64,000 bases of DNA from Glycera tridactyla (taxonomy: Eukaryota), in contig OZ286467.1 of assembly GCA_965644265.1 (NCBI GenBank), positions 100,564,001-100,628,000 of the forward strand, written 5' to 3'. This document shows, piece by piece, positions 2,914 through 62,502 of this stretch. The translations under genes and the position numbers were made by a program. Numbering within the stretch: position 1 is the stretch's first letter; each line of letters opens with the position of its first letter. Under the pieces are notes generated by a model. It did not search any database and was not told the DNA's origin. It worked only from the letters and a program-made list of their open reading frames with translations.

Positions 2914-3282
2914 GCCTCCCCATATAAATGTCAGAAGTGTGATCGAAGCTTTACACGACACTTTGGACTAACTCAACATGATCGAGAAGTACACCAGGGG
3001 CTGCGTAACCATATATGCCGCTATTGTGGGCGTTCATTTAGCCGTTTCTATGTGAAAAAGTGCCATGAGATTCGCCACCTAAAGCGTGTTATGCGTAATA
3101 GCGGGCCTGCTGCGGTGATGAACATGCCCAATGTAGGGGGTCCGCCTGCAGCCGACGGCAGCGCTCTGGCGTTTCAGCCCCCGCAGCAACCCGTCTCGTT
3201 GCATGCACAGGCCTTACCTGCACCGACGCCTCCTGTCACTGCACCTCTATCTATCGATAACGATTTATTCAACACAAACTAA
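2914..3282 (+). CDS. ZF terminal exon 1 (two canonical C2H2, P/Q-rich tail)
   Basis: ttcttctag|GCC; ASPYKCQKCDRSFTRHFGLTQHDREVHQGLRNHICRYCGRSFSRFYVKKCHEIRH. Confidence 0.85.
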   Translation, partial: ASPYKCQKCDRSFTRHFGLTQHDREVHQGLRNHICRYCGRSFSRFYVKKCHEIRHLKRVMRNSGPAAVMNMPNVGGPPAADGSALAFQPPQQPVSLHAQALPAPTPPVTAPLSIDNDLFNTN

Positions 3283-3818
3283 AGTGCTTCTTGATTGTAA
3301 ATAGAAATTGTGAATAGAAATGATGTGAAGAGTCACACCCGGTATAAAGGCAATGTCTACGTAATGAACACCCAACTGCAACGTGTCAGATACTGGAGTA
3401 ATGTCAGAAAAGTTGAAATATTGTACAGTAGAACGAACCTGTATCAATCAACCACTCTCACAGAATGAGCAGTTGCTTGGGACAGGTCGTTACTTGATTC
3501 AGTTATTTTAGTGGAAAATACTCAGACGGGATATCGAAGTGGTTACTGAATACAGTGGTTGCTTGATACAGTTTCTACTGCATCGCGATACCCAGGGTTG
3601 AGAAAATCAAGTAAGCTAATTCTGTCCAAAAAAAAGGATCATATGGTCATTTTTTGTTACGGATTTTAAGCATGCAGGATTTAGAGTAGAGCGTTTTCTG
3701 TAATTAATTTTCAAATTAAATCAGGAGATTGCTCCCACCTGCAATTACAGAATCTTTGTCTATTAACAGATCCATTTGTCCGAGAATAACTACAACTGGC
3801 CACTGATGTATGTTGTAG

Positions 3819-4163
3819 GGGGACATAAATTGTTGCCTCTGTGGTCGCTCTTTCCGCTCCCAGTCGGGACTGGGTCAACATATGCGTCAGGTGCACATGC
3901 CGGCACGGCCACATGCCTGCCAGCGTTGCGGTCGCCGGTTCGAACGTCACTTCAACATGCGGCGCCATGCCAAGAACTGCCACCCTCACTCACTCCCACC
4001 TCCTCTCGATAATATCTATGTGCACAGTCCATCGACACAGGCGCCGGATGTCGGGCAGCGGCCCTGTCCGGCAAGTCCTCTGCTAGTTGATACTATCCAT
4101 GTTCACAGTCAATCGACACGGTCGCCGGATGACGGCCAGAAACCCTGTCCAACAAGTCCTTAG
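3819..4163 (+). CDS. ZF terminal exon 2
   Basis: tgttgtag|GGG; GDINCCLCGRSFRSQSGLGQHMRQVHMPARPHACQRCGRRFERHFNMRRHAKNCH; tail has a 27-aa duplication. Confidence 0.87.
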   Translation, partial: GDINCCLCGRSFRSQSGLGQHMRQVHMPARPHACQRCGRRFERHFNMRRHAKNCHPHSLPPPLDNIYVHSPSTQAPDVGQRPCPASPLLVDTIHVHSQSTRSPDDGQKPCPTSP

Positions 4164-4672
4164 CTTCCAGTCATGATCAGGTCCCGAGACTCAAGTGGGA
4201 AACACCTCACAGATTTGCTTAACCCTTTCATAGAATGAACAGTCATTTATTGGCCCTGGTGCTACTCTATGAGGAATTTCATCCTTGTTGATTCAATGAC
4301 ATGATGAAAAGTTATTGTACGTACGTAAAATGAAGCCTTCAGTGATTGATTGGTACTTTTCAGCTCACAACAGGAGGAGTTTCATTAGGAGACATATCTT
4401 ATATCACCTCTCTGGAGTTGTGACCATGATGGTATTTTCTACAGCAAACAACCTCTGTATGAAGACCACTTATCAACAAAGACCACTTTCGATCAGACTC
4501 ATGGTGGTCTCTGTAGATGGGGTCATTTACCTACTTGGTCAGTATTGTTGGTACTGATTGGTTTTGCTCTCATGCGACGATAGAACTTTGGTTGGTATGC
4601 ACAATTGCCCGGTGAACTTTGTGGTGTGCAGCAGACAGTTTGAGTGACTTGGAACCGGTTTGTCTGTTCCAG

Positions 4673-4894
4673 GACAGTTTGATCTGTGTTGTTTGCGGAC
4701 AGCAGTTCCGACGCAAATCTGGGCTGCTTCAGCATGTACGTCAGGTGCACTATGGCACGAGAGGTCATACGTGCAATTCGTGTGGCAAAGGATTTGTGCG
4801 CTTCGCTGATTTGAAACGCCACATGACATTCACACAGTGCCATAAAAGAGCGGGAGAGAGTCTTGAGAAACCAGACATTTCACCATTCAAGTAG
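4673..4894 (+). CDS. ZF terminal exon 3
   Basis: tgttccag|GAC; DSLICVVCGQQFRRKSGLLQHVRQVHYGTRGHTCNSCGKGFVRFADLKRHMTFTQCH. Confidence 0.87.
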   Translation, partial: DSLICVVCGQQFRRKSGLLQHVRQVHYGTRGHTCNSCGKGFVRFADLKRHMTFTQCHKRAGESLEKPDISPFK

Positions 4895-4898
4895 TGAT

Positions 4899-4972
4899 TA
4901 CAGTCGAACCTGCTCTAAAGACCACCTCTCTATAAAGACCTGGAAGGCGGTCTTTATAGAGAGGATCGACTA
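4899..4972. mobile_element. MITE family A, short copy (Tc1/mariner-like)
   Basis: TA+CAGTCGAACC...GAGGATCGAC+TA; same termini as the longer copies. Confidence 0.65.
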
Positions 4973-5448
4973 CTCTCATTATTGGTTGAAATTCAGGCAT
5001 TTTTTGCATAGCTCAACTCCTAAAATTGTGATATTTTGAGTCTTGTGAAAAATTTCTGTTTCTTTTTTTCGAGCTGAAATATATCCATCAAGGCTCAATA
5101 TAGCCAGGTGCTGCATATTTTGGATATGCTACAGAAAAATTTGAGTTTGGTACCAGCTCACTCCTGGAGACAATGGATAAAGTGAATCATTAAATACCGA
5201 CTATCAAGAATTTGGAGTATTTATTAGTCTTTTTGAGCTGAAATGTCGGCATCTCGCTTGTCACCTCACTCCCAACAGATTCATGACCCCTTTATGTGAT
5301 CATTGCAAATAGTGGGGGCACCATCACTATTCCTGAAACGGGCATTATTACTAATTTTGGTCATGAAAGGTCGGCACCCCTGACCGTCAAACATGTGGGG
5401 GGAGTTATCTAGTGAAGTTCTGATATTAGCCTATCTTCTATGTTGTAG

Positions 5449-5655
5449 GGAATGAAGACAATATGTCCAGTTTGTCATAAAAAAATGTCCACGCGCTCAG
5501 GTCTCGGCCAGCACATGCGTCATGTCCATTTTGGTGTTAGGCCTCACCCATGTCGTTTCTGCTCTCGGCGGTACTTCCGTCAGTGTGACAGGGATGTCCA
5601 TGAGAAGACGAACCACCAATCTGCCGCCTTGAATGACCACAGTCAAAACTTTTAA
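5449..5655 (+). CDS. ZF terminal exon 4
   Basis: tgttgtag|GGA; GMKTICPVCHKKMSTRSGLGQHMRHVHFGVRPHPCRFCSRRYFRQCDRDVHEKTNH. Confidence 0.87.
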   Translation, partial: GMKTICPVCHKKMSTRSGLGQHMRHVHFGVRPHPCRFCSRRYFRQCDRDVHEKTNHQSAALNDHSQNF

Positions 5656-5841
5656 TTAGAATTGGTTTTAGGGTTGGTTATATCTCCATCGAGGTTTACC
5701 ATACCCGTGATGGCCGAGGTGGATTCCAACATCTTGTGTTCAGGGTTTATGTAAGTGATGCCTGCAGGGGACTGAAGATCTCATTTTCATTGACCAGAAA
5801 CACATGGTATACATGATCTGGGTTAATGCATACTATTGAAC

Positions 5842-5876
<35 letters not shown>

Positions 5877-5907
5877 TGAAGGTGTTTGAAATGTGTCACC
5901 ATGATAG

Positions 5908-6088
5908 TACAGTAAAACCTGTCTTAAGTGAAAAGTCACGGGACCAAATTTTTCTTTCACTTAAGACAGGATTTTGCTTAGCGCAGGACAATTATAGAGA
6001 GAAAAAAACATCCGGGCAGACAGTGGGGTATGTGCTTAAGACAGGATTTTGCCTAGCGCAGGTTTACTCTCGAGCAGGTTTCACTGTA
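5908..6088. mobile_element. MITE family A2 (TA target)
   Basis: TACAGTAAAACCTG...CAGGTTTCACTGTA; close match at 32632-32812, internally deleted copy at 33367-33425. Confidence 0.8.
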
Positions 6089-6127
6089 AATAGAATAAAT
6101 TAACAAGCAGATATCACTGTGTTTCAG

Positions 6128-6328
6128 ATAAGGCAGACTGTGGGAACCCCCGTGGTTTGTCATTATTGTCAACGCGCTTACCAGCATGAGAAAAATCTCC
6201 AGACCCATATCAGGGTTGTGCATCTCACGGCCGATAAGTCGCACAAGTGTCTCCGATGTGGTGCGGCATTTCGCTGGAGGCAGTCCTATAAAAGACATAT
6301 GAAAACTTGTATACCATACCCTCCATGA
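6128..6328 (+). CDS. ZF terminal exon 5 (finger 2 ends H-x3-C)
   Basis: tgtttcag|ATA; VCHYCQRAYQHEKNLQTHIRVVHLTADKSHKCLRCGAAFRWRQSYKRHMKTC. Confidence 0.85.
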   Translation: MRQTVGTPVVCHYCQRAYQHEKNLQTHIRVVHLTADKSHKCLRCGAAFRWRQSYKRHMKTCIPYPP

Positions 6329-6747
6329 AAGAATGCATATGATGGTCTGATGGTGTGATGCTATTTCGTAGTGAAGTTTACGGTTTTAATTTGAGATTTC
6401 GTTATTCTCGGCATGCGAGCGTCAGGTCACAGAATACATGCTAATCTTTTTCGACTCAATATATTGTTGCTTCCATCCCATAGTTTGGAACGGAGTATAT
6501 GTCCGCATGTGAATATCAGTCATTCTCAATCTTTATAGTTCGTAATAAATGGGCCTTTCAATGAACAATCCCTGCTTTCTGGGTTTGCAGCACCCTCAAA
6601 TAGTTAGTTCACTTTGGTCTCTAACTCTGAAACTACTAACCTGCATGCATGGCTTTGAAAAAATTTAAAACTGGAAACTTACTGACTGAATTGAAAATCA
6701 GATAAAACTTGACTCAAACATAATGCACACAACCTTGTGTGTTGCAG

Positions 6748-7209
6748 GAAGTGTGTCCAATTTGTCATCGTGCGTTTCAGCATCTCAAACGCCACATTCG
6801 CGACGTCCACCTTAAGGAGCGGCCTTTTGCGTGTCGCCAATGTGGCGCGACCTTCAGTCAGAAGGGTACCAGGGATCGACATGAAATCCGTATTCACACT
6901 GGGCGGAGAGAATTTGTGTGCGAGTTTTGTCAGAGGCGTTTCAAGGTTAAATGGGATTTGACTGTACACTTGAGGGGTGTCTGTTCCGGCCAGCCGAGGG
7001 CGTTCTCTCAAGATTCAGTTGATATGGGCACCCAAGATTATTCTGGCGGTGTATCGCACCCTTCTGATAATGGTGATGGGGAATTTGAAACGTCACACGA
7101 TCAGATTGACATGGGTGATGGAAACATCCCACAACTTTCGACGAGAGATGAAACAGGCGACTTCTCATATCCTTCGGTCAGTGAAGAGGGGGCTGAGGGA
7201 GAGACTTGA
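6748..7209 (+). CDS. ZF terminal exon 6 (three fingers, acidic tail)
   Basis: tgttgcag|GAA; EVCPICHRAFQHLKRHIRDVHLKERPFACRQCGATFSQKGTRDRHEIRIHTGRREFVCEFCQRRFKVKWDLTVHLRGVC. Confidence 0.9.
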   Translation, partial: EVCPICHRAFQHLKRHIRDVHLKERPFACRQCGATFSQKGTRDRHEIRIHTGRREFVCEFCQRRFKVKWDLTVHLRGVCSGQPRAFSQDSVDMGTQDYSGGVSHPSDNGDGEFETSHDQIDMGDGNIPQLSTRDETGDFSYPSVSEEGAEGET

Positions 7210-7386
7210 ATCGTCGACTCGAGAGGTGATGCAATAACCACCTTTACCATCGCCGAACACATTTAGACTTCATTTCTCATTTCAAATTGGGTGACATGTT
7301 TGAGATCTTCCTGGTATCGCTTGTTTTATTTGAGCTTTATCCGATTGGTAGCAGTATCGAGTGACCAGTTTCTTTTGTGTTTGCAG

Positions 7387-7608
7387 GAATTTCCATTAAC
7401 TCTACTACAAAAGGGGCAGCGTGGACTGGCGGGGGAATGTCCTGTATGTCACAAATACGTGTCTTATGTAAAGAGACACCATCGCGAAGTGCATCTCCAG
7501 GAAAGAAAATTCCTTTGCACTGTCTGTGGAAAACGCTTCGGACAGAAAATAACTCTGCAGCGTCACGCATTACAGCACCAGCCTATCTGTATAGAACCCT
7601 CGAAATGA
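7387..7608 (+). CDS. ZF terminal exon 7
   Basis: gtttgcag|GAA; ECPVCHKYVSYVKRHHREVHLQERKFLCTVCGKRFGQKITLQRHALQH. Confidence 0.87.
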   Translation, partial: EFPLTLLQKGQRGLAGECPVCHKYVSYVKRHHREVHLQERKFLCTVCGKRFGQKITLQRHALQHQPICIEPSK

Positions 7609-7724
7609 ATCTTTCCGTTTCGCTTTAGATTGATGTTTTTGGGGTGGTATCTGACTCAGTCGGGAGAATAGGGAGAATAAGCAGAAGTGACAGCTAAAGT
7701 GTGATTTTGCATCTTGTTTTGCAG

Positions 7725-7919
7725 CACTTTTTGAACTTGACTAGACCTGCTGGACCGAACTGTCATATCTGCAAAAAAAATGTGACAGATCCCTATCGCC
7801 ACTTTCGAGAGGTTCACCTGAAGGAGAGGAAGTTTGCGTGCTGCATTTGTGGGAAACGCTTCGGGCAGAAGATTACTATGCAAAGGCACCAGGCTAAAAT
7901 GCACCGAGAATGTCAGTGA
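7725..7919 (+). CDS. ZF terminal exon 8
   Basis: ttttgcag|CAC; NCHICKKNVTDPYRHFREVHLKERKFACCICGKRFGQKITMQRHQAKMH. Confidence 0.85.
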   Translation, partial: HFLNLTRPAGPNCHICKKNVTDPYRHFREVHLKERKFACCICGKRFGQKITMQRHQAKMHRECQ

Positions 7920-7940
7920 TGGTTTGGCTCGGTGGGTGAA

Positions 7941-8000
7941 TCCGGTTAGATATGGGTGGATCCGGTTAGATATGGGTGGATCCGGTTAGATATGGGTGTA
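7941..8000. repeat. 20-bp minisatellite x3
   Basis: TCCGGTTAGATATGGGTGGA x3, just after the exon 8 stop. Confidence 0.9.
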
Positions 8001-8590
8001 GATGGAGATTTTGAGATGTAGCATAACCACATTCCGGCTATGGCCTTGTTTAGTTAGTTTCAGAATGATGCTGGTATCAATGGAGATGCCAGTTTCCTGG
8101 TCGGACTTGCAGATTTTCTCGATTGAAGAATCCAAATTCGACTGAGAGTTCAATCAGCTTGGATTTGATATTATCAATGTCATTGGTTTTATCACCCTGT
8201 CAATTGATCATTAGGGGCATCAGCTTGCGCAGTTCAAGTGATTCCAATCATGACTGAGATAATTTGGGAGTTCTCAAAACTTGCATTGTTTTCAGAAATT
8301 TCGATCAATTACACAAATCCTGTTGAAGTACTGACCACGGCGGAAGCTGCTATGGGAGACCCCCTAATGAGATCGCTTGTCTGAAGAGACCATCTGTGCT
8401 CTCTTTGTCTATTTGACATGGTCAAATATGGAGTGGTCTCAGAGGAGGTTTCACTATACATCGGCACAAATCACGAGGTTGTAATTGCTGACCTTAACTC
8501 GATCCGAACGTGTTCCCGAGAAGATCTGTTGCCTCGGAGCCTCATCAAGCTTGAGAAAAATCCTGAATTCGGTTTTCTTTGTGCTTGCAG

Positions 8591-8806
8591 GCACCATGCA
8601 CTAACGAAAAGCGGTGGAGTCACTGTCCTATATGTCAAAAGTGTATAAAACGTGCATCAGACGTGAAACGGCATATCCGGGATGTACATTTGAAGGAAAA
8701 ACCCCATGTTTGCCAATATTGTAAGCGGGGATTTGGACAGAAATCGTCCCTCAAAACCCATGTATACAGTATACATGGAGTGTTTGATCCACATGACAAC
8801 CCATAG
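8591..8806 (+). CDS. ZF terminal exon 9
   Basis: gcttgcag|GCA; HCPICQKCIKRASDVKRHIRDVHLKEKPHVCQYCKRGFGQKSSLKTHVYSIH. Confidence 0.87.
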   Translation, partial: APCTNEKRWSHCPICQKCIKRASDVKRHIRDVHLKEKPHVCQYCKRGFGQKSSLKTHVYSIHGVFDPHDNP

Positions 8807-14412: not shown

Positions 14413-14574
14413 TATAGTCGAACCTGTCTATTAAGACCGCCTTCGGTCGCATCAAAAAGCAGTCTTTATGGGCAGGTGGTCTTTATAGAGGTCATTTACT
14501 GTTGAAAATACTACCACAGTTGCAGCTCAGGTGGTCTTTATAGAGAGGTGGTCTTTAGAGCAGGTTCGACTGTA
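14413..14574. mobile_element. MITE family A (Tc1/mariner-like, TA target)
   Basis: Inverted termini (C/T)AGTCGAACCTG / CAGGTTCGACTG flanked by TA; internal GGTGGTCTT repeats. Confidence 0.75.
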
Positions 14575-14749: not shown

Positions 14750-14938
14750 GGACAGACCGCGCCATGTCCAATCTGTCAATTGCCGATCACTCGAAACCAT
14801 TTGCAGCGACACGTCCGTATGGTACATCTCGGCAAGAGAAATCATGCATGCCCAGTTTGTGACAAAAAGTTTGGCCAGAAATACAATATGGAGAGACACA
14901 TAGCTCAAGTACATCAGAGATACCGGCCCATATCATGA
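14750..14938 (+). CDS. ZF terminal exon 18
   Basis: tgttccag|GGA; PCPICQLPITRNHLQRHVRMVHLGKRNHACPVCDKKFGQKYNMERHIAQVH. Confidence 0.88.
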   Translation, partial: GQTAPCPICQLPITRNHLQRHVRMVHLGKRNHACPVCDKKFGQKYNMERHIAQVHQRYRPIS

Positions 14939-18880: not shown

Positions 18881-20452
18881 CTGTATTATCCTTCCATTCC
18901 AGAATTCTTTTCTTCCAAATCATCAGACTTGCTTACTGATCACTGGTGCTGATTTTCCGAAAAGAAATTGGATGAGAAGTAATCTGAGAAATTGCTAGAA
19001 TCAGGTTGGGAGTTTCAGAACAAATACCTTTGATATGTGGAGGTAGTTTCAGTAAATGTTTCCATATTTCTGAAAATTCAGCTTCATCCCATTGACATCA
19101 CTGACTGATGAAGTTTCAGATGACCCAACAAACCTACAGATGATACGTCTAGATTTGTGAAATGTTAGGCCTCTACCAATGATACGTGAAGAGATTGAGG
19201 TGGCAGAGAGATCAGGGATGATAGAGCTTCAGACTTGATGACTGCATCCTGAGGTTGGATCAAAATGGACAATTGATTGATGCTTCAGTTCGCGTTTCTA
19301 TCGGCCTTTTGTGATCATAATGGTATAGACATGATTGCAAGATGTGTTGGGAGAATTTGAAGGGCTGAGACTGATGAGTGCCCCATTGCCTCACTAGATG
19401 ACAAAGTGATGGTCTTGTTAGATGATAATTTGGATGAGAAAAATGTAATCGCGCTGAATTTTATTGGCCAGCCCATATAGAGTGTCTCTAGTTGAAAGAC
19501 GATGCACGAATAGTGATGTTGGATTTGGATGAGTATTTGCAGACTGGATGGACAATAACTCTCATATCGAGAACAACAGTAAAGTTTCGATGATTCAATA
19601 GGGCAATTGTTGGAAAATCAATGTGAGAATCACGGAGATTGATATTCTCACTGCACTTGAGTCGACCAGGCTCCTTTTATCGTGGAACGGTGTGCATGAC
19701 TGTTTTCAATGTGTGTGATTGTAATGATGATAAATAAAGATAGAAATGTTTACATCTTGTCTTATTTTGGCAACCTATTGAGTTCAGGTTCTCTGAGGCC
19801 ACTTGATATAGATAATATCACTAGGGTTATTCGGTCAGTTGTAGGTGAATGATAGTAATTTGAACGCGAAGCCCCCACATTTCAGGGACTTTCTTGCCCG
19901 GGAATATGTATGGGTCTTTCAGGCGCATTGATGCAGATTTCATGTGTCATTTCGAGTTCGTGTGTGCCTCAAACCATGTGATCATATCAAAAAGTATGGA
20001 AAATTCCATGTGCCTTCTGGGCACAAGGTATATGGTTTGATGTGCCCTCTCACAACTTTATGTGCCATTTGCCACAGGGCACAGCGTAAAATTATCCCTG
20101 ACATTTGAAATGGATAGGTTGCATATTTTATCACATAGATTTGACATTTTCAGTGAAGTATCAGGTGTCGAGTATTGCGTGTGATACTTCACAGCTGGAT
20201 GAGAACTACTTTTTCGAGAATTTCTCCCCCAATCCATGTGATAAAAGCAAGAATACATAGCCGTGAGTTAAAATAACAAATACAAACTCGGTTGGAATTT
20301 CGCTTGATTTCACTTTGCCTTCAGCTTCATGACATCCTGCAGAATTCACACCTTGTTTTTAGCTCACAGCCTTATATTCTTGCCAAGTTTTGGCGCTATT
20401 AGGAGACGAAGTGAAGGCTAATCTGAAGCCAACATTATCTTCTCTGTTGTAG

Positions 20453-23285: not shown

Positions 23286-23489
23286 ACCACTAGTGGAAAA
23301 AGGGTTGTGTGTCCCAAATGTCAGGTAGTGCTGCCTGCATCAGAGGCCGCTCATCATTTTCGGTCCGTGCATCAAATGAAGATTTTCACATGTCCAATTT
23401 GCGGCAAAACGTGCAACAGAAGGTACAACCTGAAGGTTCACATGTACGGTCGTCATCCCCAGCATGAACTTACCAAACTTATTCAATGA
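23286..23489 (+). CDS. ZF terminal exon 28 (divergent, short linker)
   Basis: tgtttcag|ACC; VCPKCQVVLPASEAAHHFRSVHQMKIFTCPICGKTCNRRYNLKVHMYGRH. Confidence 0.82.
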   Translation, partial: TTSGKRVVCPKCQVVLPASEAAHHFRSVHQMKIFTCPICGKTCNRRYNLKVHMYGRHPQHELTKLIQ

Positions 23490-25450: not shown

Positions 25451-25499
25451 TATCCATGCTCCTGAGATGGAAGTAGGGCATATAATATACAATGTCATA

Positions 25500-33866: not shown

Positions 33867-34133
33867 ACGCTCCCGTGTAAATACTGCTGTACGCCTATAG
33901 CTCGTGCTAACATGAGTCGTCATATTCGAACCGTTCATTTGAAGGAAAGGCGATTTGAATGCCCTGTCTGTTGTAAATTATTCAGTGAAAAGGGAAATAT
34001 GAAACGCCATATAGTAAACCTGCACCCAGATCACCTTGAATCGGCGCTCAATACGACACAAGAGGACCAAGACCGGCGGAATGAGACCCCTCCACCCGAA
34101 AATTCCAGCAGCTGGGCAGATTCTGCAGAATAA
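33867..34133 (+). CDS. ZF terminal exon 36 (40 nt after stop of exon 35)
   Basis: tgtttcag|ACG; PCKYCCTPIARANMSRHIRTVHLKERRFECPVCCKLFSEKGNMKRHIVNLH. Confidence 0.88.
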   Translation, partial: TLPCKYCCTPIARANMSRHIRTVHLKERRFECPVCCKLFSEKGNMKRHIVNLHPDHLESALNTTQEDQDRRNETPPPENSSSWADSAE

Positions 34134-39328: not shown

Positions 39329-39508
39329 AAGAGTGAGGCCATGGCTTGCACTTACTGTAACAAGAGAGTGGTTAACTTGAATCAACACATTCGAGTTGTA
39401 CACTTGAAGGAAAAGAGATTCCAGTGTAGCGTCTGTGGGAAGAACTTTGGTCAGAAGCAGGGCTTGCAATATCACATGTATACGAAACACGTGAAGAAGA
39501 AACTGTAG
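39329..39508 (+). CDS. ZF terminal exon 41 (recent duplicate of 40)
   Basis: tgttgcag|AAG; ACTYCNKRVVNLNQHIRVVHLKEKRFQCSVCGKNFGQKQGLQYHMYTKH. Confidence 0.88.
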   Translation, partial: KSEAMACTYCNKRVVNLNQHIRVVHLKEKRFQCSVCGKNFGQKQGLQYHMYTKHVKKKL

Positions 39509-39522
39509 TCAGAGATTTTATA

Positions 39523-42466: not shown

Positions 42467-42658
42467 AGTGAGCGGGGCGGAAATTGCCCGTATTGCCACA
42501 AATCCATTCTGCGCAAAAACCTCAAGCAACATGTGAAAGTTGTTCACCTCAAAGTGAAGCCATTTGAGTGTGCGACATGCGGGATGAAGTTCGCTCGAAA
42601 ATGTGAGCAGCGATATCACGAATTATATCAACATGAACTACCTGCCAAAAATGGATAG
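42467..42658 (+). CDS. ZF terminal exon 46
   Basis: tgttgcag|AGT; NCPYCHKSILRKNLKQHVKVVHLKVKPFECATCGMKFARKCEQRYHELYQH. Confidence 0.87.
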   Translation, partial: SERGGNCPYCHKSILRKNLKQHVKVVHLKVKPFECATCGMKFARKCEQRYHELYQHELPAKNG

Positions 42659-42969: not shown

Positions 42970-43472
42970 AGTGCCCCTGTATTGGATGCATGAGGTATCG
43001 GTCAGAGCCCTCATTTGGACATTCACTGTCAGGCTTTTGTTTGTTTCACTAGTAGCAATAGTCAGTGATGCAAGTTTTCTGGAGATTTGCTGAATTCAGG
43101 AAATTTGACTCAAAATTCTAATCCAAAAGTTTCCGGAATCGGACTGAAAGTTTCAAATTCTGTGCTATTGGAAGTACAAAAGTATACAGGGGTAGTTTCA
43201 GGAAATTTGGCCAGGTTTCAGGAAATTCTTCATCACTGCATAGTGTACATCAGGCACATTTCAACTATTCTAGCTAGTGTTTGGAGTTTGTTACGTCATC
43301 AATCAGTGATCAGGTTGACTATTCTTTATGGTGAAGTCCCTCTATAATGACCACCTGTCTGCAATGACCACCTCGATGTTACTCTTGTGTTCTTCATGGG
43401 CAGGTTTACTATCTCAGGGCTCTACATTCACCTACCCTACCAACAAATCTGCCTGCCTGTGCCAGTAAGGTA

Positions 43473-43649
43473 GAAATTGCCCTCATTGCCAAATCCATTT
43501 TGCGCAGAAACCTCAATCAACATGCGAGAGCTGTTCACTGTGAAGTGGAGCTGTTTGAGTGTGCCACGTGCGGGATGAAGTTCGCTTGGAAATGCGAGCT
43601 GCGATATCACAAATCATATCGGCATGAAATACCTGTAAAATGTAAATAG
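43473..43649 (+). pseudogene. Broken ZF cassette (decayed copy of exon 46)
   Basis: aattgccctcattgccaaatccattttgcgc aligns to exon 46 aattgcccgtattgccacaaatccattctgcgc with a 2-nt deletion; usual acceptor and lead-in replaced by repeat DNA; downstream frame still reads ..HCEVELFECATCGMKFAWKCELRYHKSYRH..*. Confidence 0.8.
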
Positions 43650-43773: not shown

Positions 43774-43959
43774 AGCGGCAGTGTTGAACAGTGTCCAATC
43801 TGTCATAAGGCTATCTCGCGTAGACATCTTAAAGAGCACGTACGGTTTATCCATCTGAAAGAGAGGCCATTTCAGTGTCACATTTGCGGACAGAAATTTA
43901 CCCGAAAGCGTGACCACAAATATCACATGGTGTCACGACATAAAGAGCTTCCCTCGTAA
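43774..43959 (+). CDS. ZF terminal exon 48 (recent duplicate of 47; not in ORF track)
   Basis: tgttccag|AGC; QCPICHKAISRRHLKEHVRFIHLKERPFQCHICGQKFTRKRDHKYHMVSRH. Confidence 0.88.
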   Translation, partial: SGSVEQCPICHKAISRRHLKEHVRFIHLKERPFQCHICGQKFTRKRDHKYHMVSRHKELPS

Positions 43960-46074: not shown

Positions 46075-46460
46075 ACAGGCACCCCATGTAGAATCCATGA
46101 CCAACCTTTTGTTATCAGGGATGTAAATGTACCGACTTTACGCAGATTTCCGTGTTTTCCATCACAAATTTGGTGGGAAATTAATACGACAAAAATGTGC
46201 ATTTTTCTGCTGATTATTTCAGATCTTAGATCATAGAGATCAGACGAGAATTAGTGGAGATGATGCACATAGTTTGTATGGAGTTACCATGAGTGGACAG
46301 TTATGAATCACCATGAGTGGGCAGTTATGAAATCTCACATGATTGGTTTGTGGGTCAAACCCTAAGGAGATTGTGGGTCAAACCTTTAAGACGGTCCTGG
46401 CCACATTAAGTAGTTTTTGTAGACAGGTGGCCTTGGTATAAGGCTGTTCCCTCTACAAAA

Positions 46461-46538
46461 TACAGTCGAACCTCCTCTAAAGACTGTCTCCCTATAAAGA
46501 CCAACCTAAGCTGGTCTTTATAGAGAGGTTCAACTGTA
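46461..46538. mobile_element. MITE family A, short copy
   Basis: TACAGTCGAACCTC...GAGGTTCAACTGTA. Confidence 0.7.
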
Positions 46539-46691
46539 TTGTCAAAATCATGCCTTCAGGTGATCTTCATAGGCAGATTGTATTTGCACAGAGGTGGATT
46601 AGAGCAGGGTTGACTATTTGATTTTGGGGATTCCTGCATTGCAAGATCAAGATTTGGTATTTTACTCGACAACTGCTCTGATCTGTTTCAG

Positions 46692-47021
46692 AAACTGCCA
46701 GCTAGAGAGTGCAGGTTTTGTGGAAGATTTGTTGTTCATGTGTCGCGCCATATTCGCACGGTGCATCTGAACATGAAAGAACACGCCTGCAGGATCTGTG
46801 GTAAAAGTTATACTGACAGGCGTAATCAGCTCAAGCATGAGAAAGCAAAGCATCCCGAATTTGACCTTTCGGCTGCTGATGAAAAAGCACAGCATCCCGA
46901 ATTTGACCTTTCGGCTGCTGCACAGCTTCCCGAATTTGACCTTTCGACTGCTGCACAGCATCCCAAATTTGACCTTTCGGCTGCTGAGTGCACAGAACAA
47001 GAAGTGCAATTCGAAAAGTAG
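46692..47021 (+). CDS. ZF terminal exon 52 (tandem-repeat tail)
   Basis: tgtttcag|AAA; ECRFCGRFVVHVSRHIRTVHLNMKEHACRICGKSYTDRRNQLKHEKAKH then (QHPEFDLSAAA)-type repeats. Confidence 0.88.
   Translation, partial: KLPARECRFCGRFVVHVSRHIRTVHLNMKEHACRICGKSYTDRRNQLKHEKAKHPEFDLSAADEKAQHPEFDLSAAAQLPEFDLSTAAQHPKFDLSAAECTEQEVQFEK
46845..46985 (+). repeat. In-frame 33-bp tandem repeat x4 in exon 52
   Basis: GCACAGCATCCCGAATTTGACCTTTCGGCTGCT x4 (first unit followed by 9 extra nt). Confidence 0.9.
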
Positions 47022-47509
47022 AGACAATGGGGCAGAGTTAGATACAAGTTCATAGTGAAAAATTCAGTGCTCAAAATGCATCTGTAATTAGTACATTGTG
47101 ACGATTAGAGATATGGTACATAAGACATTCTGTGAGCTGTCCAAATCTCGAATTCAATGTTAATTTAATTTGTTTTGTTGTATCGAGAGAAACCAGTGGT
47201 TTCAAATCAATCCCACCTAAGTTGTCAAGTTCGGGGACTCTTGTTTGCATAGACTCATTGAGGTAAATCATTTGTTCTGTATGTGGAACAGGTCATTGAT
47301 CACAGTATTTGTTCATGAATCTGTTGTGAGTTAGCCATGGTTGACGATCAAAATGTGAAATATTGTACTCGCCGAGATGGAACACACCCGATTACCGTAC
47401 TTCTTGCTTTAAGTCTTTTGTCTACCCTTGTTTCACAGTCGTCCTCTTCAAAGTTGTTAAAGTTTGGACCTTGCAAGTTACTTAGCGTGGTGGTCATTCT
47501 ATGTTTCAG

Positions 47510-47737
47510 AAGGCTCCATCCCTTAAGCTGTGTCCATATTGTCGCAAACTCATCTCTGCGCACAACCTAACACGCCATGTTCGTACTGTTCACTTGGGCT
47601 ATCGACCGTTCTCTTGCAAGATATGTGGCAGAGACTTTACAGAAAAACGCGGCCTTCAGTATCATATGATGAGTGCACATTCAAAGAGCCTGTCAGATAT
47701 GCCAGACAAGGGCAGTGCGCATGGACAGGGCACATAG
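47510..47737 (+). CDS. ZF terminal exon 53 (paralog of 51)
   Basis: tgtttcag|AAG; LCPYCRKLISAHNLTRHVRTVHLGYRPFSCKICGRDFTEKRGLQYHMMSAH. Confidence 0.88.
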   Translation, partial: KAPSLKLCPYCRKLISAHNLTRHVRTVHLGYRPFSCKICGRDFTEKRGLQYHMMSAHSKSLSDMPDKGSAHGQGT

Positions 47738-47929
47738 GTGCTCAATCCCAAATCCACGACCAACCAATCTGTTAGGCCTTCATTCCACTGTAGAGCAAAC
47801 TGTTGAAATCGTGGTCCTGGAGGCCAGGCGGTCATGGTATAGGCTAGATAATGTTTGACTATTTGCTTTCTGGACTTCTGTGTTGCAAAATCAAGATTCA
47901 ATATCTTACTTCACAACCATCTGTTTCAG

Positions 47930-48193
47930 AAACTGGCAACTGAAGAGTGCAGGTTCTGTGGGAAATTTGTTACTCGCGTGAAGCGTCATATCCGTACGGT
48001 GCATTTGAACATAAAAGCGTTTGCCTGCAGGATCTGTGGTAAACGATTCATTGAAGGGCGTAATCAGGTCCAACATGAGAGATCGCAGCACCCAGAATTT
48101 GACCTTTCGGCTGCTGTGTTCACCAAACAAGACCAAAATCCTGAAAGTAATGAAAACGAAGGGGAGTTAGATATTCAAAATAGTTCATACTGA
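47930..48193 (+). CDS. ZF terminal exon 54 (paralog of 52)
   Basis: tgtttcag|AAA; ECRFCGKFVTRVKRHIRTVHLNIKAFACRICGKRFIEGRNQVQHERSQH. Confidence 0.88.
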   Translation, partial: KLATEECRFCGKFVTRVKRHIRTVHLNIKAFACRICGKRFIEGRNQVQHERSQHPEFDLSAAVFTKQDQNPESNENEGELDIQNSSY

Positions 48194-51758: not shown

Positions 51759-53048
51759 GCTCTCAGTGAGTGTCCCATTTGTCATGAGATCAAACTTCGC
51801 ACCAGTCTGAGACGACACATAGAGAATGTTCATCTCAAAGAGAGGACTCATGCATGTACATTGTGTGGCCGTGCTTTCGGCCAAAAGGCGTCTCTCAACC
51901 GCCATATCAAGATGGTACATTCCGAGCCAAAACACCGTCTACAGAAATCATCGAAATCAAAAATTCTCTCAGCATCGAAGCGTAAACGCTTTGTTAGCAA
52001 AGTAGTCAATGCTACAGTGATTGATGAAAAGTTGACGAAAGTACCTCAGGTGATGTTAACAGATATAGCAGTAAAACCCGGAACAGTGAAGAAGCATTCC
52101 GAATCTGAAGTATCGGCTGAGGCCGATACAAGTGTGGAAGCCATCGCTTACCCTGAAATTGTTGCCAGTGAAGAGACGCAGTTCATGGTAGTAGTCGATA
52201 TAGATGATGCCAGCGATACCCCTGATTCCGCAGCCAAAACGCAATCTGTGTCCTCAAAGGTTAGGAGTCCTAGGAAGATGCAATCGGGTGAAGCAACAGG
52301 GGACAACAAAACTGGCGAAAATGTTGTGAAGAACATTTCTAAGGCGCATCCCTCAGAAATTCAGAGAAAAAGTATGCGAGCGAAGAGAGCAAGCCGAATG
52401 CTAGGCTCGGATTTCATTACAGATGACGCCGCCTATAAGCAGGGCAGCCAAAATCCTGACAGGGATTTGATTTTGAAAAAGTCTGGACTGAACTCTCCCA
52501 GTTCATCGAGTGACCATGAATATGCTTCGGAAAATCCAGTCAAAGCTCCTGTAAGAGTGAAATATGCCAGGAAAATGACTCCACAACCCTCAGAATCTGA
52601 AAAGGCAGAAATCCACAAAATATTGAAGCAAATGGCTCTCAAACCCCCTATAACAAGAACGCCTTCAAAATCCAATGAGCATTTTCCTTGTCCCATTTGT
52701 AAAAATCGCTATTATATGAAGGGTATGAAGAGGCATATAGTTACGGTTCATCTAGGACAGAGGGATCATGCATGTCCAGTGTGTGAGAAATCCTTTGGTC
52801 AAAGGGGCTCGATGCTGAGACATCGTAGGATGGTGCATAAAGACGTAGAGGATGTCTCGGATGATGGGACGTCATCAAGTCTGAGTGAAACCGAGGACGA
52901 AACAGAGGATGTGTCAGAAGATGACGCCACCATGGCACAAGATGACGCCACTGTAGACGGCGTTCTGAGCACTTCTGACCTAGCAGAACAGCCAGTAGTT
53001 ATCAGCGAGGCAACAAATGCAGAAGATGGAGAAAGCATGCCCATCTAA
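51759..53048 (+). CDS. ZF terminal exon 57: 429-aa cassette with two finger pairs separated by a long low-complexity spacer
   Basis: tgttgtag|GCT; ALSECPICHEIKLRTSLRRHIENVHLKERTHACTLCGRAFGQKASLNRHIKMVH ... PCPICKNRYYMKGMKRHIVTVHLGQRDHACPVCEKSFGQRGSMLRHRRMVH + acidic tail; in frame with ORF 51861..53048. Confidence 0.9.
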   Translation, partial: ALSECPICHEIKLRTSLRRHIENVHLKERTHACTLCGRAFGQKASLNRHIKMVHSEPKHRLQKSSKSKILSASKRKRFVSKVVNATVIDEKLTKVPQVMLTDIAVKPGTVKKHSESEVSAEADTSVEAIAYPEIVASEETQFMVVVDIDDASDTPDSAAKTQSVSSKVRSPRKMQSGEATGDNKTGENVVKNISKAHPSEIQRKSMRAKRASRMLGSDFITDDAAYKQGSQNPDRDLILKKSGLNSPSSSSDHEYASENPVKAPVRVKYARKMTPQPSESEKAEIHKILKQMALKPPITRTPSKSNEHFPCPICKNRYYMKGMKRHIVTVHLGQRDHACPVCEKSFGQRGSMLRHRRMVHKDVEDVSDDGTSSSLSETEDETEDVSEDDATMAQDDATVDGVLSTSDLAEQPVVISEATNAEDGESMPI

Positions 53049-55480: not shown

Positions 55481-55666
55481 GTCCTTCCGACCAACCAATG
55501 TCCTATCTGTAAGGAATGGCGTAGTGATATGAAGCGGCATATTCGAACCGTTCATCTCAAGGAAAAACGTTTTCAGTGTCCGGTCTGTCATAAGCGGTTT
55601 GGGGAGAGTGGAAACATGAAGAAACACATGGCAATACATATGGACGAACAAACAGAACCGTTATAA
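55481..55666 (+). CDS. ZF terminal exon 58
   Basis: tgttgcag|GTC; QCPICKEWRSDMKRHIRTVHLKEKRFQCPVCHKRFGESGNMKKHMAIH. Confidence 0.88.
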   Translation, partial: VLPTNQCPICKEWRSDMKRHIRTVHLKEKRFQCPVCHKRFGESGNMKKHMAIHMDEQTEPL

Positions 55667-56016
55667 TCCTGTCACCATGACAATACTTGAATCCTTTAAT
55701 AGGGCGCTAGATTAACTTTTAACTTACAATCATAGCCTCAAAATTGGTTTGGCAGCCCTTAGCGTAGGGCCCTCATTAGTCACTCAATACTACTTCCACT
55801 TGACAACCTTTCATTATCTTGTGTTCAGGGTATGTGAGAGTGATGCCTGCAGGGGACAGAATATTTTGCTTTCAGTGACCACGAACACACGGCATACATG
55901 ATCCTCTTGGTTGATACATGCCGTCAAACCACAAAACAAACTTGCTATCAAACCTCAATCGCCTCAATCAAATATGAACAAACAAATCAATCAATCAATT
56001 TTACTGACTGTTGTAG

Positions 56017-60870: not shown

Positions 60871-61077
60871 GGACCCGTGGCTCCCTGTCCAATTTGTCAC
60901 CAATTAAGAGGGCGCAAGGATATGAGTCGTCATATACGCATGGTCCACCTGAAAGAGAAACGTTTTCCGTGTGAAATTTGCGGAAAACGATTCAGTCAGA
61001 GGAGTAATCTCAATCAGCATTCGGTCTCGGTTCACGGAGTCCTTCCTCCGAGAAATGGCTCGGTGTCGACAACTTAA
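60871..61077 (+). CDS. ZF terminal exon 64
   Basis: gttttcag|GGA; PCPICHQLRGRKDMSRHIRMVHLKEKRFPCEICGKRFSQRSNLNQHSVSVH. Confidence 0.88.
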   Translation, partial: GPVAPCPICHQLRGRKDMSRHIRMVHLKEKRFPCEICGKRFSQRSNLNQHSVSVHGVLPPRNGSVSTT

Positions 61078-61189
61078 TTCAATTTCGCACGTTTAATTTT
61101 TGCTGAGCAGCTTGAGCTATGGTGATATGGCAGATGTAGTCATGAAGATGGAAAACTTGGGTGAAACCATTTTCGAGAGTCCATAATTA

Positions 61190-61413
61190 GATTCAGTATA
61201 TTCAGGAAGAGTAGGTAGAGGTGTGTCTGAACTTATAGCTACTTCCACTTGACAACCTTTCAGGTTCCCCATCATCTTGTGTTCAGGGTTTGTGAGAGTG
61301 ATGGCTGCAGGAGAAAGAACATCTAGCTTTCATTAACTAGGAATACATGGCATACCTAATCCTGTGGGTTGATACATGCCGTTAAACCTCAAACAAACAA
61401 ACAAACAAACAAA
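61190..61413 (+). mobile_element. SINE-like repeat family D, 3' part with (CAAA)n tail
   Basis: GTAGAGGTGTGTCTGAAC..TTCCACTTGACAACC..GTTCAGGGTTTGTGAGAGTGATG..TAAACCTC(AAAC)n; copies at about 5725-5876 [(CAAT)n tail], 26580-26665, 54930-55190, 55790-56000, 57000-57200; no pol III boxes identified. Confidence 0.55.
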
Positions 61414-61575
61414 TCCCCTCTTTTGAGACTGCCCTCTTTGTACTGACTGCTCTTCATTGATTCTTTTCTATTTGGCATAGTCGAATATACCTCCAGTGTG
61501 AGACCACAACTCTTGGGAGACCGCTTGTGGTTGGCATTTGGGCCAGTCTCCCTAGAGAGGTTTCACTGTATCAGT

Positions 61576-61757
61576 CAGTGGTGCCAATTTTCCGAAAATT
61601 TTCGGAAAATGAGAATTGGGTGAAAACTGATAATTCCCGGAATTGCTATAATCTACTTGGGAGTTTCAAAATAAATACTTTTGCTGATATGATGCGGTAG
61701 TTTCAGAAAACATTCCTATATTTCCGAAAATTCAGCTTCATCCCATTGGCATCACTG
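61576..61757. mobile_element. MITE family C (CAGTGRTGCCAA termini)
   Basis: CAGTGGTGCCAAT...ATTGGCATCACTG; similar copies at about 18940-19105, 34287-34467, 41840-42000, 43063-43240; target duplication length inconsistent, superfamily not assigned. Confidence 0.65.
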
Positions 61758-62080
61758 AATCAGTAATGAACATGTATTCACAGGGATGTGATTGTTCCGT
61801 CGATGCATGTTTTTGATCACAAATGTGGCAATCCATGTATTTTATGCGGATCGATATGAGGACCAGATCATGTTTTCTGGCCTCAGTTAGGTTTTTAGGG
61901 ATTTTGGTTGATAGCCAATGACATTCTAGAAACATCAGTAATGCATATCAGACATCTTTGAAGTAGAAATTTCCAGGTACTCACAGTGTGAAGATTCGTG
62001 GTGTAGAAGCTTTCTGTGAGCGACTGAGCGTCCACCCTCTTTCATCAGCTACAGGCTACTGTGACTTGGCTGTTGCTTGA

Positions 62081-62097
62081 TCACGTGACCCGGAAGT
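62081..62097. promoter_or_regulatory. Adjacent E-box (TCACGTGA) and ETS (CCGGAAGT) motifs; candidate promoter element
   Basis: tcacgtgacccggaagt, 165 bp upstream of the exon 65 acceptor; motif match only. Confidence 0.35.
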
Positions 62098-62262
62098 TGA
62101 GCGAGGATCACATGATATTAGGATCTCCGCATATAGGAGAATATCAGACATCCTTGCGAACCCCGACCAGCCAATCAACCAACCAACCATCCATCCGACC
62201 AACCAACCCAATCCGTGATTTCCCTGCAACTACAAGTTCCCTTCTCTTCTTGTATGTTGTAG

Positions 62263-62502
62263 GTGTTATGTCCCCATTGTCACCAACCTAAGGTGCGCAA
62301 AAATCTGCAGCGGCACATTCGTATAGTCCACCTGCAGGAGAAGACGTCCCAGTGCAAATACTGTGGCAAATGGTTTAGTCAACGCTCCAATATGAAGCAG
62401 CATATAGCTCTCAGACATTCGAACGAGATCGAGCGCATTCTCACGTCTCCCTGCTCGATCATGCCCAAAAAATTGTGGTATACCAAAGACGGGGATAAAT
62501 AA
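62263..62502 (+). CDS. ZF terminal exon 65
   Basis: tgttgtag|GTG; LCPHCHQPKVRKNLQRHIRIVHLQEKTSQCKYCGKWFSQRSNMKQHIALRH. Confidence 0.88.
   Translation: MLCPHCHQPKVRKNLQRHIRIVHLQEKTSQCKYCGKWFSQRSNMKQHIALRHSNEIERILTSPCSIMPKKLWYTKDGDK

What the first reader, a model, noticed from the sequence alone, without database searches (positions are those of the whole stretch)
2914..62502. A 65-way alternative terminal-exon array of zinc-finger DNA-binding modules
Seen: 65 intact cassettes on one strand, each directly after a YAG acceptor, all entering in phase 0, each encoding a related finger pair and then a stop. Many have an in-frame TAG as the acceptor itself, so they cannot be read as standalone ORFs from upstream. 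Established: Drosophila lola (about 20 isoforms) and mod(mdg4) (about 30) join a constant BTB region to one of many variable 3' exons; tramtrack, broad and fruitless do so with a few. Inference: this is one gene producing at least 65 transcription-factor isoforms with a shared N-terminus and interchangeable DNA-binding ends, larger than those known loci and possibly in another lineage. Gene predictors would probably shatter or miss it.
Basis: partly seen in the sequence, partly recalled or inferred. Interest (0 to 1): 0.95.

Follow-up and report, generated by a model that had tools for sequence, protein, structure and literature searches.

The report
65 alternative zinc-finger end exons
A 60-kb stretch holds 65 same-strand exons, each a splice acceptor followed by a different two-finger DNA-binding module and a stop, which most likely lets one gene (5' part outside the window) make about 65 transcription-factor versions, as fly lola does with about 20.

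Summary
There are 65 intact cassettes at 2914-62502, plus one decayed copy, all on the + strand. Each starts at a phase-0 YAG acceptor (46 CAG, 19 TAG) and ends in a stop.

The acceptors share an unusually fixed motif, T-N-TGTT-K-YAG: 49 copies on +, 2 on -. Forty of 64 cassettes have no in-frame ATG before finger 1. None has a consistent donor. Gaps can be as short as 40 nt. All 64 aligned cassettes differ at the base-contacting residues.

Three consecutive cassettes are kept in order in another species, with similarity limited to each exon plus 20-40 nt before its acceptor, and pN is about 0.2 against saturated pS. RNA-type runs cover cassettes, and three contigs end exactly one base before predicted acceptors.

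Best reading: mutually exclusive 3' coding exons spliced to an upstream constant part. That part is not in the window and I could not find it, so "BTB" and "one shared donor" remain inferred. No junction read was seen.

Canonical poly(A) signals are not enriched between cassettes, so downstream cassettes may serve as 3' UTR.

The scan notes a second such array on the same chromosome. No paper describing such a locus outside arthropods was found.

The parts
2914..62502 (+). Whole array: 65 intact cassettes plus 1 decayed copy. Coding sequence is 26% of the span; median start-to-start spacing is 812 nt.
2914..3282 (+). Cassette 1, TAG acceptor, 122 aa; more canonical C2H2 pair
3819..4163 (+). 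Cassette 2, TAG acceptor, 114 aa; an RNA contig ends at 3818
4673..4894 (+). Cassette 3, CAG, 73 aa
5449..5655 (+). Cassette 4, TAG, 68 aa
6128..6328 (+). Cassette 5, CAG, 66 aa
6748..7209 (+). Cassette 6, CAG, 153 aa, three fingers; ortholog in L001/L002; an RNA contig ends at 6747
7387..7608 (+). Cassette 7, CAG, 73 aa; ortholog in L001; an RNA contig ends at 7386
7725..7919 (+). Cassette 8, CAG, 64 aa; ortholog in L001
8591..8806 (+). Cassette 9, CAG, 71 aa
9180..9359 (+). Cassette 10, CAG, 59 aa
9969..10169 (+). Cassette 11, TAG, 66 aa
10645..10866 (+). Cassette 12, TAG, 73 aa
11501..11704 (+). Cassette 13, CAG, 67 aa
11865..12038 (+). Cassette 14, TAG, 57 aa
12409..12612 (+). Cassette 15, TAG, 67 aa
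13226..13636 (+). Cassette 16, CAG, 136 aa
14179..14364 (+). Cassette 17, CAG, 61 aa; modelled, pLDDT 89, two beta-beta-alpha fingers
14750..14938 (+). Cassette 18, CAG, 62 aa
16164..16388 (+). Cassette 19, CAG, 74 aa
16696..16947 (+). Cassette 20, CAG, 83 aa
17295..17582 (+). Cassette 21, CAG, 95 aa
18144..18359 (+). Cassette 22, TAG, 71 aa
18680..18880 (+). Cassette 23, CAG, 66 aa
20453..20881 (+). Cassette 24, TAG, 142 aa
21265..21462 (+). Cassette 25, CAG, 65 aa
22005..22199 (+). Cassette 26, CAG, 64 aa
22792..22992 (+). Cassette 27, CAG, 66 aa; acceptor moved here by the unbiased scan
23286..23489 (+). Cassette 28, CAG, 67 aa
24516..24707 (+). Cassette 29, CAG, 63 aa
25172..25450 (+). Cassette 30, CAG, 92 aa
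27181..27378 (+). Cassette 31, CAG, 65 aa
28225..28419 (+). Cassette 32, CAG, 64 aa
29280..29486 (+). Cassette 33, CAG, 68 aa
31955..32137 (+). Cassette 34, CAG, 60 aa
33560..33826 (+). Cassette 35, TAG, 88 aa; its stop lies only 40 nt before the next acceptor
33867..34133 (+). Cassette 36, CAG, 88 aa
36209..36412 (+). Cassette 37, CAG, 67 aa
37223..37414 (+). Cassette 38, CAG, 63 aa
37978..38163 (+). Cassette 39, TAG, 61 aa
38801..38980 (+). Cassette 40, CAG, 59 aa; young duplicate of cassette 41
39329..39508 (+). Cassette 41, CAG, 59 aa
40022..40207 (+). Cassette 42, CAG, 61 aa
41099..41278 (+). Cassette 43, CAG, 59 aa
41616..41801 (+). Cassette 44, CAG, 61 aa
42078..42266 (+). Cassette 45, CAG, 62 aa; second finger ends H-x2-C
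42467..42658 (+). Cassette 46, CAG, 63 aa
42784..42969 (+). Cassette 47, CAG, 61 aa; 92% identical to cassette 48
43368..43649 (+). Decayed copy: the first Cys pair of finger 1 is lost
43774..43959 (+). Cassette 48, CAG, 61 aa
44388..44579 (+). Cassette 49, CAG, 63 aa
45185..45382 (+). Cassette 50, CAG, 65 aa
45847..46074 (+). Cassette 51, CAG, 75 aa
46692..47021 (+). Cassette 52, CAG, 109 aa; tail holds a 33/42-nt coding tandem repeat
47510..47737 (+). Cassette 53, CAG, 75 aa; paralog of cassette 51
47930..48193 (+). Cassette 54, CAG, 87 aa
49402..49590 (+). Cassette 55, TAG, 62 aa
50617..50862 (+). Cassette 56, TAG, 81 aa
51759..53048 (+). Cassette 57, TAG, 429 aa; two finger pairs in one exon
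55481..55666 (+). Cassette 58, CAG, 61 aa
56017..56214 (+). Cassette 59, TAG, 65 aa
57459..57656 (+). Cassette 60, CAG, 65 aa
58556..58771 (+). Cassette 61, TAG, 71 aa
59460..59651 (+). Cassette 62, TAG, 63 aa
60174..60356 (+). Cassette 63, TAG, 60 aa
60871..61077 (+). Cassette 64, CAG, 68 aa
62263..62502 (+). Cassette 65, TAG, 79 aa; last of the array

Best explanation
The array is the variable 3' part of one transcription-factor gene. Its constant 5' exons lie upstream of the window on the + strand.

Proposed mechanism:
1. One upstream donor at a codon boundary (phase 0), probably after a G, pairs with one of 65 acceptors.
2. Everything between the donor and the chosen acceptor is removed as intron.
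3. Translation runs through a 57-429 aa exon that supplies a pair of classical C2H2 fingers and stops.
4. No cassette has a donor, so downstream acceptors have no partner and stay inert. Downstream sequence, at times including later cassettes, would remain as 3' UTR until a usable cleavage site is reached.

Each isoform would then carry the same N-terminus with a different DNA-reading end. All 64 aligned cassettes differ at the base-contacting positions. The array grew by local tandem duplication and is old and under purifying selection.

Shown: the anatomy, the fixed acceptor motif, phase uniformity, absence of donors, dependence on an upstream start, the fold, conservation, and transcription.

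Inferred: a single shared donor, cis rather than trans joining, the nature of the constant part, and the 3' end behaviour.
For: - 65 intact cassettes, all on +.
- The best AG in any phase is phase 0 in 64 of 64 cassettes.
- Acceptor motif: 49 on + against 2 on -, with 46 at cassettes. T, G, T, T at -8 to -5 occur in 59, 56, 63 and 64 of 64.
- 40 of 64 cassettes have no in-frame ATG before Cys1, and 19 acceptors are TAG.
- No consistent donor after or inside the cassettes: 14 weak sites in 14.6 kb, against a background of 1.8 per kb.
- Stop-to-next-acceptor distance goes down to 40, 116 and 125 nt.
- Orthologous scaffold L001/L002: three consecutive cassettes in the same order. Similarity starts 21-42 nt before each acceptor and is absent between cassettes. 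pN is 0.21 against pS 0.65-0.75.
- Young paralog pairs have pN/pS of 0.23-0.35. The nearest paralog is a median of 3 ranks away, against 19 if random.
- 64 of 64 distinct contact signatures.
- Pfam zf-C2H2 matches. A model with pLDDT 89 matches DNA-bound ZBTB7A, CTCF and Zif268, and the two-finger Tramtrack peptide 2drp.
- Runs X1-X4: 70% of laid non-repeat contig bases lie in cassette coding sequence, against 45% expected.
- Three contigs end exactly at acceptor-1 (3818, 6747, 7386), about 0.07 expected by chance. A graph fork between spliced and unspliced RNA after a shared G would give this.
Against: - No read or contig showing a junction to an upstream exon was displayed, and contigs drop rare forms.
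- The constant exons are not in positions 1-2913. Four protein-database searches did not find them.
- AATAAA is not enriched between cassettes (20 on + against 19 reverse complement). 39 of 64 cassettes have no AATAAA or ATTAAA before the next acceptor. In this respect they are unlike ordinary terminal exons.
- Several contigs run 68-124 nt upstream of acceptors unspliced. One contig spans cassettes 7 and 8 colinearly.
- The runs are only guessed to be RNA.
Confidence: 0.7

Rival explanations
1. The protein products are the same, but they are made by trans-splicing as at Drosophila mod(mdg4) and lola. Cassettes or groups of cassettes are transcribed from their own promoters as short 3' precursors. 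Their acceptors are then joined in trans to a separately transcribed constant 5' RNA.
For: Contigs begin 68-124 nt upstream of five acceptors (4549, 5377, 6680, 7306, 8518), and two runs start at the same base, 8518. This would fit short outrons. Trans-splicing is reported for both fly loci (PMC11426971, PMC6237743).
Against: No position-specific promoter-like motif lies upstream of the acceptors. All cassettes are on one strand and in one order, as cis splicing needs. Ortholog conservation stops 21-42 nt before the acceptor, short of the contig starts. Contig starts can also reflect low depth.
Confidence: 0.15
2. The cassettes are independent mini-genes for 60-150 aa two-finger proteins. A spliced leader ending in AUG is trans-spliced onto each acceptor. 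This would supply the start codon and force phase 0.
For: Phase 0 everywhere, no ATG of their own, a G just before each exon in three contig ends, and short spacing are all compatible with this.
Against: No leader sequence was seen. From my own knowledge, leaders ending in AUG are known in flatworms, whereas the only lineage hint here is annelid (an unchecked note). A polycistron would need 3' end signals between genes, and none is enriched. Two-finger proteins with no other domain would be unusual.
Confidence: 0.05
3. These are 65 conventional genes, each with a private promoter and first exon.
For: None is specific to this reading. Duplication of whole units could also keep a single phase.
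Against: Intervals of 40-600 nt cannot hold a 3' UTR, promoter, first exon and intron. No conserved block lies between orthologous cassettes. No recurrent element lies between cassettes apart from dispersed repeats.
Confidence: 0.03
4. The cassettes are consecutive exons of one giant multi-finger protein, or the array is decaying and non-functional.
For: Gene predictors do build huge poly-finger models elsewhere.
Against: Every cassette ends in a stop with no donor before it. No serial joints were seen. 65 of 66 copies are intact, with pN well below pS and cross-species conservation.
Confidence: 0.02

Closest known systems
Drosophila longitudinals lacking (lola)
   Same: Lola has a tandem, same-strand set of alternative 3' exons. 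Each encodes a pair of zinc fingers and a stop, attached to a common N-terminus. The isoforms have different DNA specificities. Reported numbers: 20 isoforms with 17 carrying fingers (PMC11426971), and all characterised isoforms use a finger pair (PMC3668361).
   Different: - This array has about three times more cassettes (65).
- Both fingers here are C2H2 with H-x4-H spacing and a VH-LKEK-x-F linker. From memory, lola's first finger is C2HC.
- The constant part here is unknown, and the TTK-type BTB is reported as arthropod-specific (PMC11426971).
- The acceptor motif is fixed.
- Most cassettes have no poly(A) signal of their own.
- The genome is probably not arthropod, but this rests on an unchecked hint.
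Drosophila mod(mdg4)
   Same: It has a constant 5' part plus 30 or more alternative 3' exons that carry the variable binding domain (PMC11426971, PMC6237743).
   Different: Its variable domain is FLYWCH, not C2H2. It is joined only by trans-splicing from independent promoters. From my own knowledge, some of its variable exons lie on the opposite strand, whereas here all 65 are on one strand.
tramtrack, broad and fruitless alternative zinc-finger ends
   Same: They use alternative C-terminal two-finger modules. The Tramtrack two-finger structure 2drp matches the model (TM 0.71).
   Different: They offer only 2-4 alternatives.
Clustered protocadherin / UGT1A variable-exon loci and Dscam exon clusters
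   Same: They also give one-of-many exon choice from a tandem array.
   Different: Protocadherin and UGT1A vary the 5' exon, each with its own promoter. Dscam cassettes are internal exons with both splice sites. Here the exons have an acceptor only and carry the stop.

Membership tests
Classical C2H2 (beta-beta-alpha) DNA-binding zinc fingers | C-x2-4-C ... H-x3-5-H ligand pattern with a conserved hydrophobic core, matched by the family models | tested here: met
   The ligands are invariant in 64 of 64 cassettes. Pfam zf-C2H2, zf-C2H2_4 and zf-H2C2_2 score above their cut-offs. The PDB profile search hits ZNF568, CTCF and ZBTB proteins.
Classical C2H2 (beta-beta-alpha) DNA-binding zinc fingers | The fold: two tandem beta-beta-alpha units as in DNA-bound fingers | tested here: met
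   The model has pLDDT 89. Foldseek gives TM 0.71-0.82 to DNA-bound ZBTB7A, CTCF, Zif268 and Tramtrack.
lola-type alternative 3'-exon transcription-factor locus (architecture) | Many tandem exons, each with an acceptor in one common phase, a finger module, its own stop and no donor | tested here: met
lola-type alternative 3'-exon transcription-factor locus (architecture) | A single set of constant 5' exons joined to each variable exon | not testable with these tools
   The upstream sequence is outside the window. The one read-laying run showed no junction. Three contig ends at acceptor-1 are only indirect support.
lola-type alternative 3'-exon transcription-factor locus (architecture) | Each variable exon is a true terminal exon with its own polyadenylation signal | tested here: not met
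   AATAAA or ATTAAA is present before the next acceptor for only 25 of 64 cassettes, with no strand enrichment. No 3' end data were available.
lola gene family proper (orthology) | TTK-type BTB domain in the constant region | not testable with these tools
   The constant region was not found. The TTK type is reported absent outside arthropods (PMC11426971).
lola gene family proper (orthology) | First finger of C2HC type followed by a C2H2 finger (feature recalled from memory) | tested here: not met
   The fourth ligand of finger 1 is His in 64 of 64 cassettes. No lola sequence was fetched for a direct comparison.
mod(mdg4)-type trans-spliced locus | Variable exons encode FLYWCH domains and are transcribed from their own promoters, some on the opposite strand | tested here: not met
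   Domains are C2H2 only, and all are on +. Promoters could not be tested.

The most novel reading that the evidence does not exclude
A non-arthropod animal (possibly an annelid) has independently evolved a lola-like gene. A single constant region is joined to any of 65 two-finger modules, which would make it the largest such transcription-factor locus described.

It would have its own rules. A dedicated acceptor element (UGUU at -8 to -5, often inside a UG-rich run) would let a specific factor govern the choice. There would be few poly(A) sites, so that groups of cassettes share 3' ends. At least one sister array lies on the same chromosome.
Probability: 0.45. Interest if true: 0.85.

Novelty: new variant of a known kind. 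Interest (0 to 1): 0.72.

Why it matters
If one gene really yields about 65 DNA-binding variants, this locus packs the diversity of a mid-sized transcription-factor family into one transcription unit. The regulatory decision then shifts from promoters to acceptor choice.

It would show that the lola/mod(mdg4) solution is not an arthropod oddity. It would also give a natural panel of 65 related two-finger modules for studying how specificity evolves.

The near-invariant acceptor motif and the lack of poly(A) signals offer concrete handles on how one acceptor out of many is picked.

On the practical side, automatic annotation will mis-model such loci, so transcription-factor counts in these genomes would be wrong.

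Tried and rejected
- **Constant exons in the window.** I looked in 1-2913 and 62503-64000 and found no credible ORF or domain.
- **429-aa exon as protein query.** It returned only generic poly-finger proteins and no self hit, so this genome's proteins are not in that database.
- **153-aa cassette as protein query.** It gave one hit, P0015, which led to the orthologous metagenome scaffolds L001/L002.
- **Exhaustive profile search.** It was swamped by giant multi-finger proteins: 243,566 hits, and the top 150 had 13-78 stretches each.
- **Alignment headed by the long exon, to reach 236-750 aa relatives.** It returned generic finger proteins. The two BTB hits were turtle ZBTB45 with ordinary TGEKP fingers.
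- **Metagenome scan with the RTVH[LF]KEK pattern.** It returned five loci, all ordinary multi-finger genes of other GC content and not arrays.
- **ESM Atlas.** It gave only generic C2H2 clusters.
- **Read laying.** There was low depth, no junctions among the rows shown, and 158 loose ends not shown.
- **Donors for a Dscam-like or serial-exon reading.** None was found.
- **Non-finger exons behind the same acceptor motif.** None was found.
- **Promoter-like or start-site motifs upstream of acceptors.** None was found.
- **Poly(A) signal variants.** None is enriched.
- **Rfam and tRNA scans.** Both were empty.
- **Literature searches for such an array outside arthropods, and for the metagenome sample.** Nothing was found.

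Full report
**1. The observation**

A strict two-finger pattern scanned over all six frames finds 65 finger pairs, every one on the + strand. They lie in 64 ORFs, because the 429-aa exon at 51759-53048 carries two pairs. A further cassette at 42078-42266 has a second finger ending H-x2-C, and it came to light through its acceptor.

A profile HMM of the cassettes hits 68 domains on + frames and none on - frames. The only decayed copy is at 43368-43649. Coding sequence is 26% of 2914-62502, and median start-to-start spacing is 812 nt.

**2. Acceptors**

Aligning on the chosen AG shows a very fixed element. T, G, T, T at -8 to -5 occur in 59, 56, 63 and 64 of 64 cassettes. T at -10 occurs in 54. 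These are followed by G/T, C/T, A, G and a purine.

The 10-nt motif T.TGTT[GT][CT]AG occurs 49 times on + and twice on -. Forty-six of the 49 lie at cassettes.

My first choice of acceptors considered only in-frame sites. I therefore rescanned every AG in any phase within 120 nt before Cys1, using a leave-one-out matrix. The best site is in phase 0 in 64 of 64 cassettes and equals the chosen site in 63 of 64. This moved one acceptor from 22774 to 22792. Final counts are 46 CAG and 19 TAG.

A G at -7 inside what should be a pyrimidine tract, kept in exons whose proteins are only about 42% identical, points to selection on a specific element. This is inference.

**3. The cassettes cannot stand alone**

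- Forty of 64 cassettes have no in-frame ATG between the upstream stop and the first cysteine. Only 8 have one inside the exon. Nineteen have the TAG acceptor as an in-frame stop.
- The stop-to-next-acceptor distance falls to 40, 116 and 125 nt. That leaves no room for a 3' UTR, a promoter, a first exon and an intron.

**4. The cassettes are not internal or serial exons**

Tails after finger 2 vary from 3 to 375 aa and end in TGA, TAG or TAA, with no shared donor. Donor-like sites after the stops are sporadic. Inside the coding parts there are 14 weak sites in 14.6 kb, against a window-wide rate of 1.8 per kb, with no fixed position or phase. No other ORF follows the acceptor motif, so this array has no non-finger alternative exons.

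**5. The protein modules**

- Pfam gives zf-C2H2, zf-C2H2_4 and zf-H2C2_2.
- The seven metal ligands are invariant. The consensus is CP-x-C ... L-x-RHIRTVHLKEK-x-F-x-C-x2-CGK-x-FGQK ... H-x4-H.
- A model of cassette 17 built on the family alignment has pLDDT 89 and two beta-beta-alpha units. It superposes on DNA-bound ZBTB7A, CTCF and Zif268, and on the Tramtrack two-finger peptide (TM 0.71-0.82).
- The residues at helix positions -1, +2, +3 and +6 of both fingers form 64 different signatures in 64 cassettes.

**6. Evolution**

Median pairwise identity of the finger core is 42%. The nearest paralog lies a median of 3 ranks away, against 19 if placement were random. This indicates growth by local tandem duplication. 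The few young pairs have pN/pS of 0.23-0.35.

One database protein, P0015, led to two metagenome scaffolds, L001 and L002. They carry the orthologs of cassettes 6, 7 and 8 in the same order. Similarity (76-78% nucleotide identity) begins 21-42 nt before each acceptor, which is itself conserved. It ends within or near the coding part, and the intervals between cassettes do not align. For these orthologs pN is about 0.21, while synonymous sites are saturated at pS 0.65-0.75.

The cassettes and their acceptors are therefore old and selected. No conserved private exon lies between them.

**7. RNA**

Four runs of one study, guessed to be RNA and kept as contigs, hold 11-17% of the words of 2800-8800. 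They and a fifth run hold 8-11% of 36101-46100.

When laid on 2800-8799, 70% of non-repeat contig bases fall in cassette coding sequence, against 45% expected.

Three contigs end exactly one base before predicted exon starts, at 3818, 6747 and 7386. I estimate about 0.07 such coincidences by chance among 40 ends. A k-mer graph forks at that point if spliced and unspliced molecules coexist and the upstream exon ends in G. This is indirect support for use of these acceptors.

No cassette-to-cassette joint was listed.

Against a simple picture:
- No junction to an upstream exon was displayed.
- Five contigs extend 68-124 nt upstream of acceptors.
- One contig covers cassettes 7 and 8 colinearly, together with the 116-nt spacer.

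**8. 3' ends**

Canonical poly(A) hexamers are at background level between cassettes: AATAAA 20 against 19 for the reverse complement, and ATTAAA 13 against 11. Thirty-nine of 64 cassettes have neither hexamer before the next acceptor.

I therefore propose that mRNAs run on to the next usable site, so that later cassettes can sit in the 3' UTR. They would be harmless there because they have no donor to pair with. The colinear contig over cassettes 7-8 fits this, but the idea is untested.

**9. What remains unknown**

The constant 5' part is not in the window. It was not recovered from any database. "BTB" is therefore unsupported, and cis against trans joining is open.

Scan notes, all unchecked, mention innexins and a candidate annelid cuticle collagen in this genome. 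They also mention a second array of at least 17 alternative 3' exons about 99.39 Mb upstream on the same chromosome. If the animal is an annelid, the TTK-type BTB of lola is not expected (PMC11426971).

**10. Comparison and verdict**

In architecture this is the lola solution: 20 isoforms, 17 with finger pairs, a common BTB, and diverse specificities (PMC11426971, PMC3668361).

It differs in several ways:
- about three times as many cassettes;
- another finger subtype;
- a fixed acceptor element;
- scarce poly(A) signals;
- probably another phylum.

It is not mod(mdg4)-like in its domain or in its strand layout.

My literature searches found no description of such a locus outside arthropods. 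That is absence in the held library only.

I rate it a new variant of a known kind. Confidence is 0.7 for the shared-N-terminus, alternative-3'-exon reading, with a further 0.15 for the same products made by trans-splicing.

Noticed in passing
window 4899-4940, 14533-14574, 27485-27543, 31194-31235, 32958-32997, 39645-39688: A roughly 42-nt dispersed repeat (core ...ACAGTCGAACCTGCTCTAAAGACCACCTCTC...) occurs in both orientations between cassettes. In the RNA-type runs it draws summed contig depths of about 20,000-30,000, so it is probably part of an abundant SINE or MITE.
   Followed up: partly
window 5656-6127 (related pieces at 32632-32812, 55816-55903, 61269-61412): A second interspersed repeat sits directly after the stop of cassette 4. 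It also has very high depth in the runs. Contigs break at its edges.
   Followed up: partly
window 46837-46986 and 4008-4160: Coding tandem repeats lie in the C-terminal tails of two cassettes. One has a 33/42-nt unit giving repeated ...HPEFDLSAA.... The other is an 81-nt duplication in cassette 2. The tails evolve by repeat expansion.
   Followed up: no
window 4549, 5377, 6680, 7306, 8518: RNA-type contigs start 68-124 nt upstream of five acceptors, and at 8518 two runs start at the same base. No shared motif lies at these points. Possible readings are outron-like 5' ends, an effect of low depth, or unspliced precursor.
   Followed up: partly
intervals between cassettes, + strand: The hexamers TGTGAA, GTGAAG, TTGTGA and ATTTTG are 2-3 times commoner on + than their reverse complements. 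GTGTGAG-like strings recur 20-40 nt after several stops. Their meaning is unknown.
   Followed up: no
window 41616-44579 and 45847-48193: Multi-cassette units were duplicated as blocks. Cassettes 51 and 52 resemble cassettes 53 and 54. Two cassette types alternate across 42078-43959, and this stretch includes the one decayed copy.
   Followed up: partly
L003, L004, L007 (metagenome contigs): These are ordinary multi-finger genes of other organisms (GC 0.48-0.54). They use the same H-x4-H spacing and VH-[LF]KEKP-[FY]-x-C linker in place of TGEKP. The cassette finger subtype therefore belongs to a wider class.
   Followed up: no
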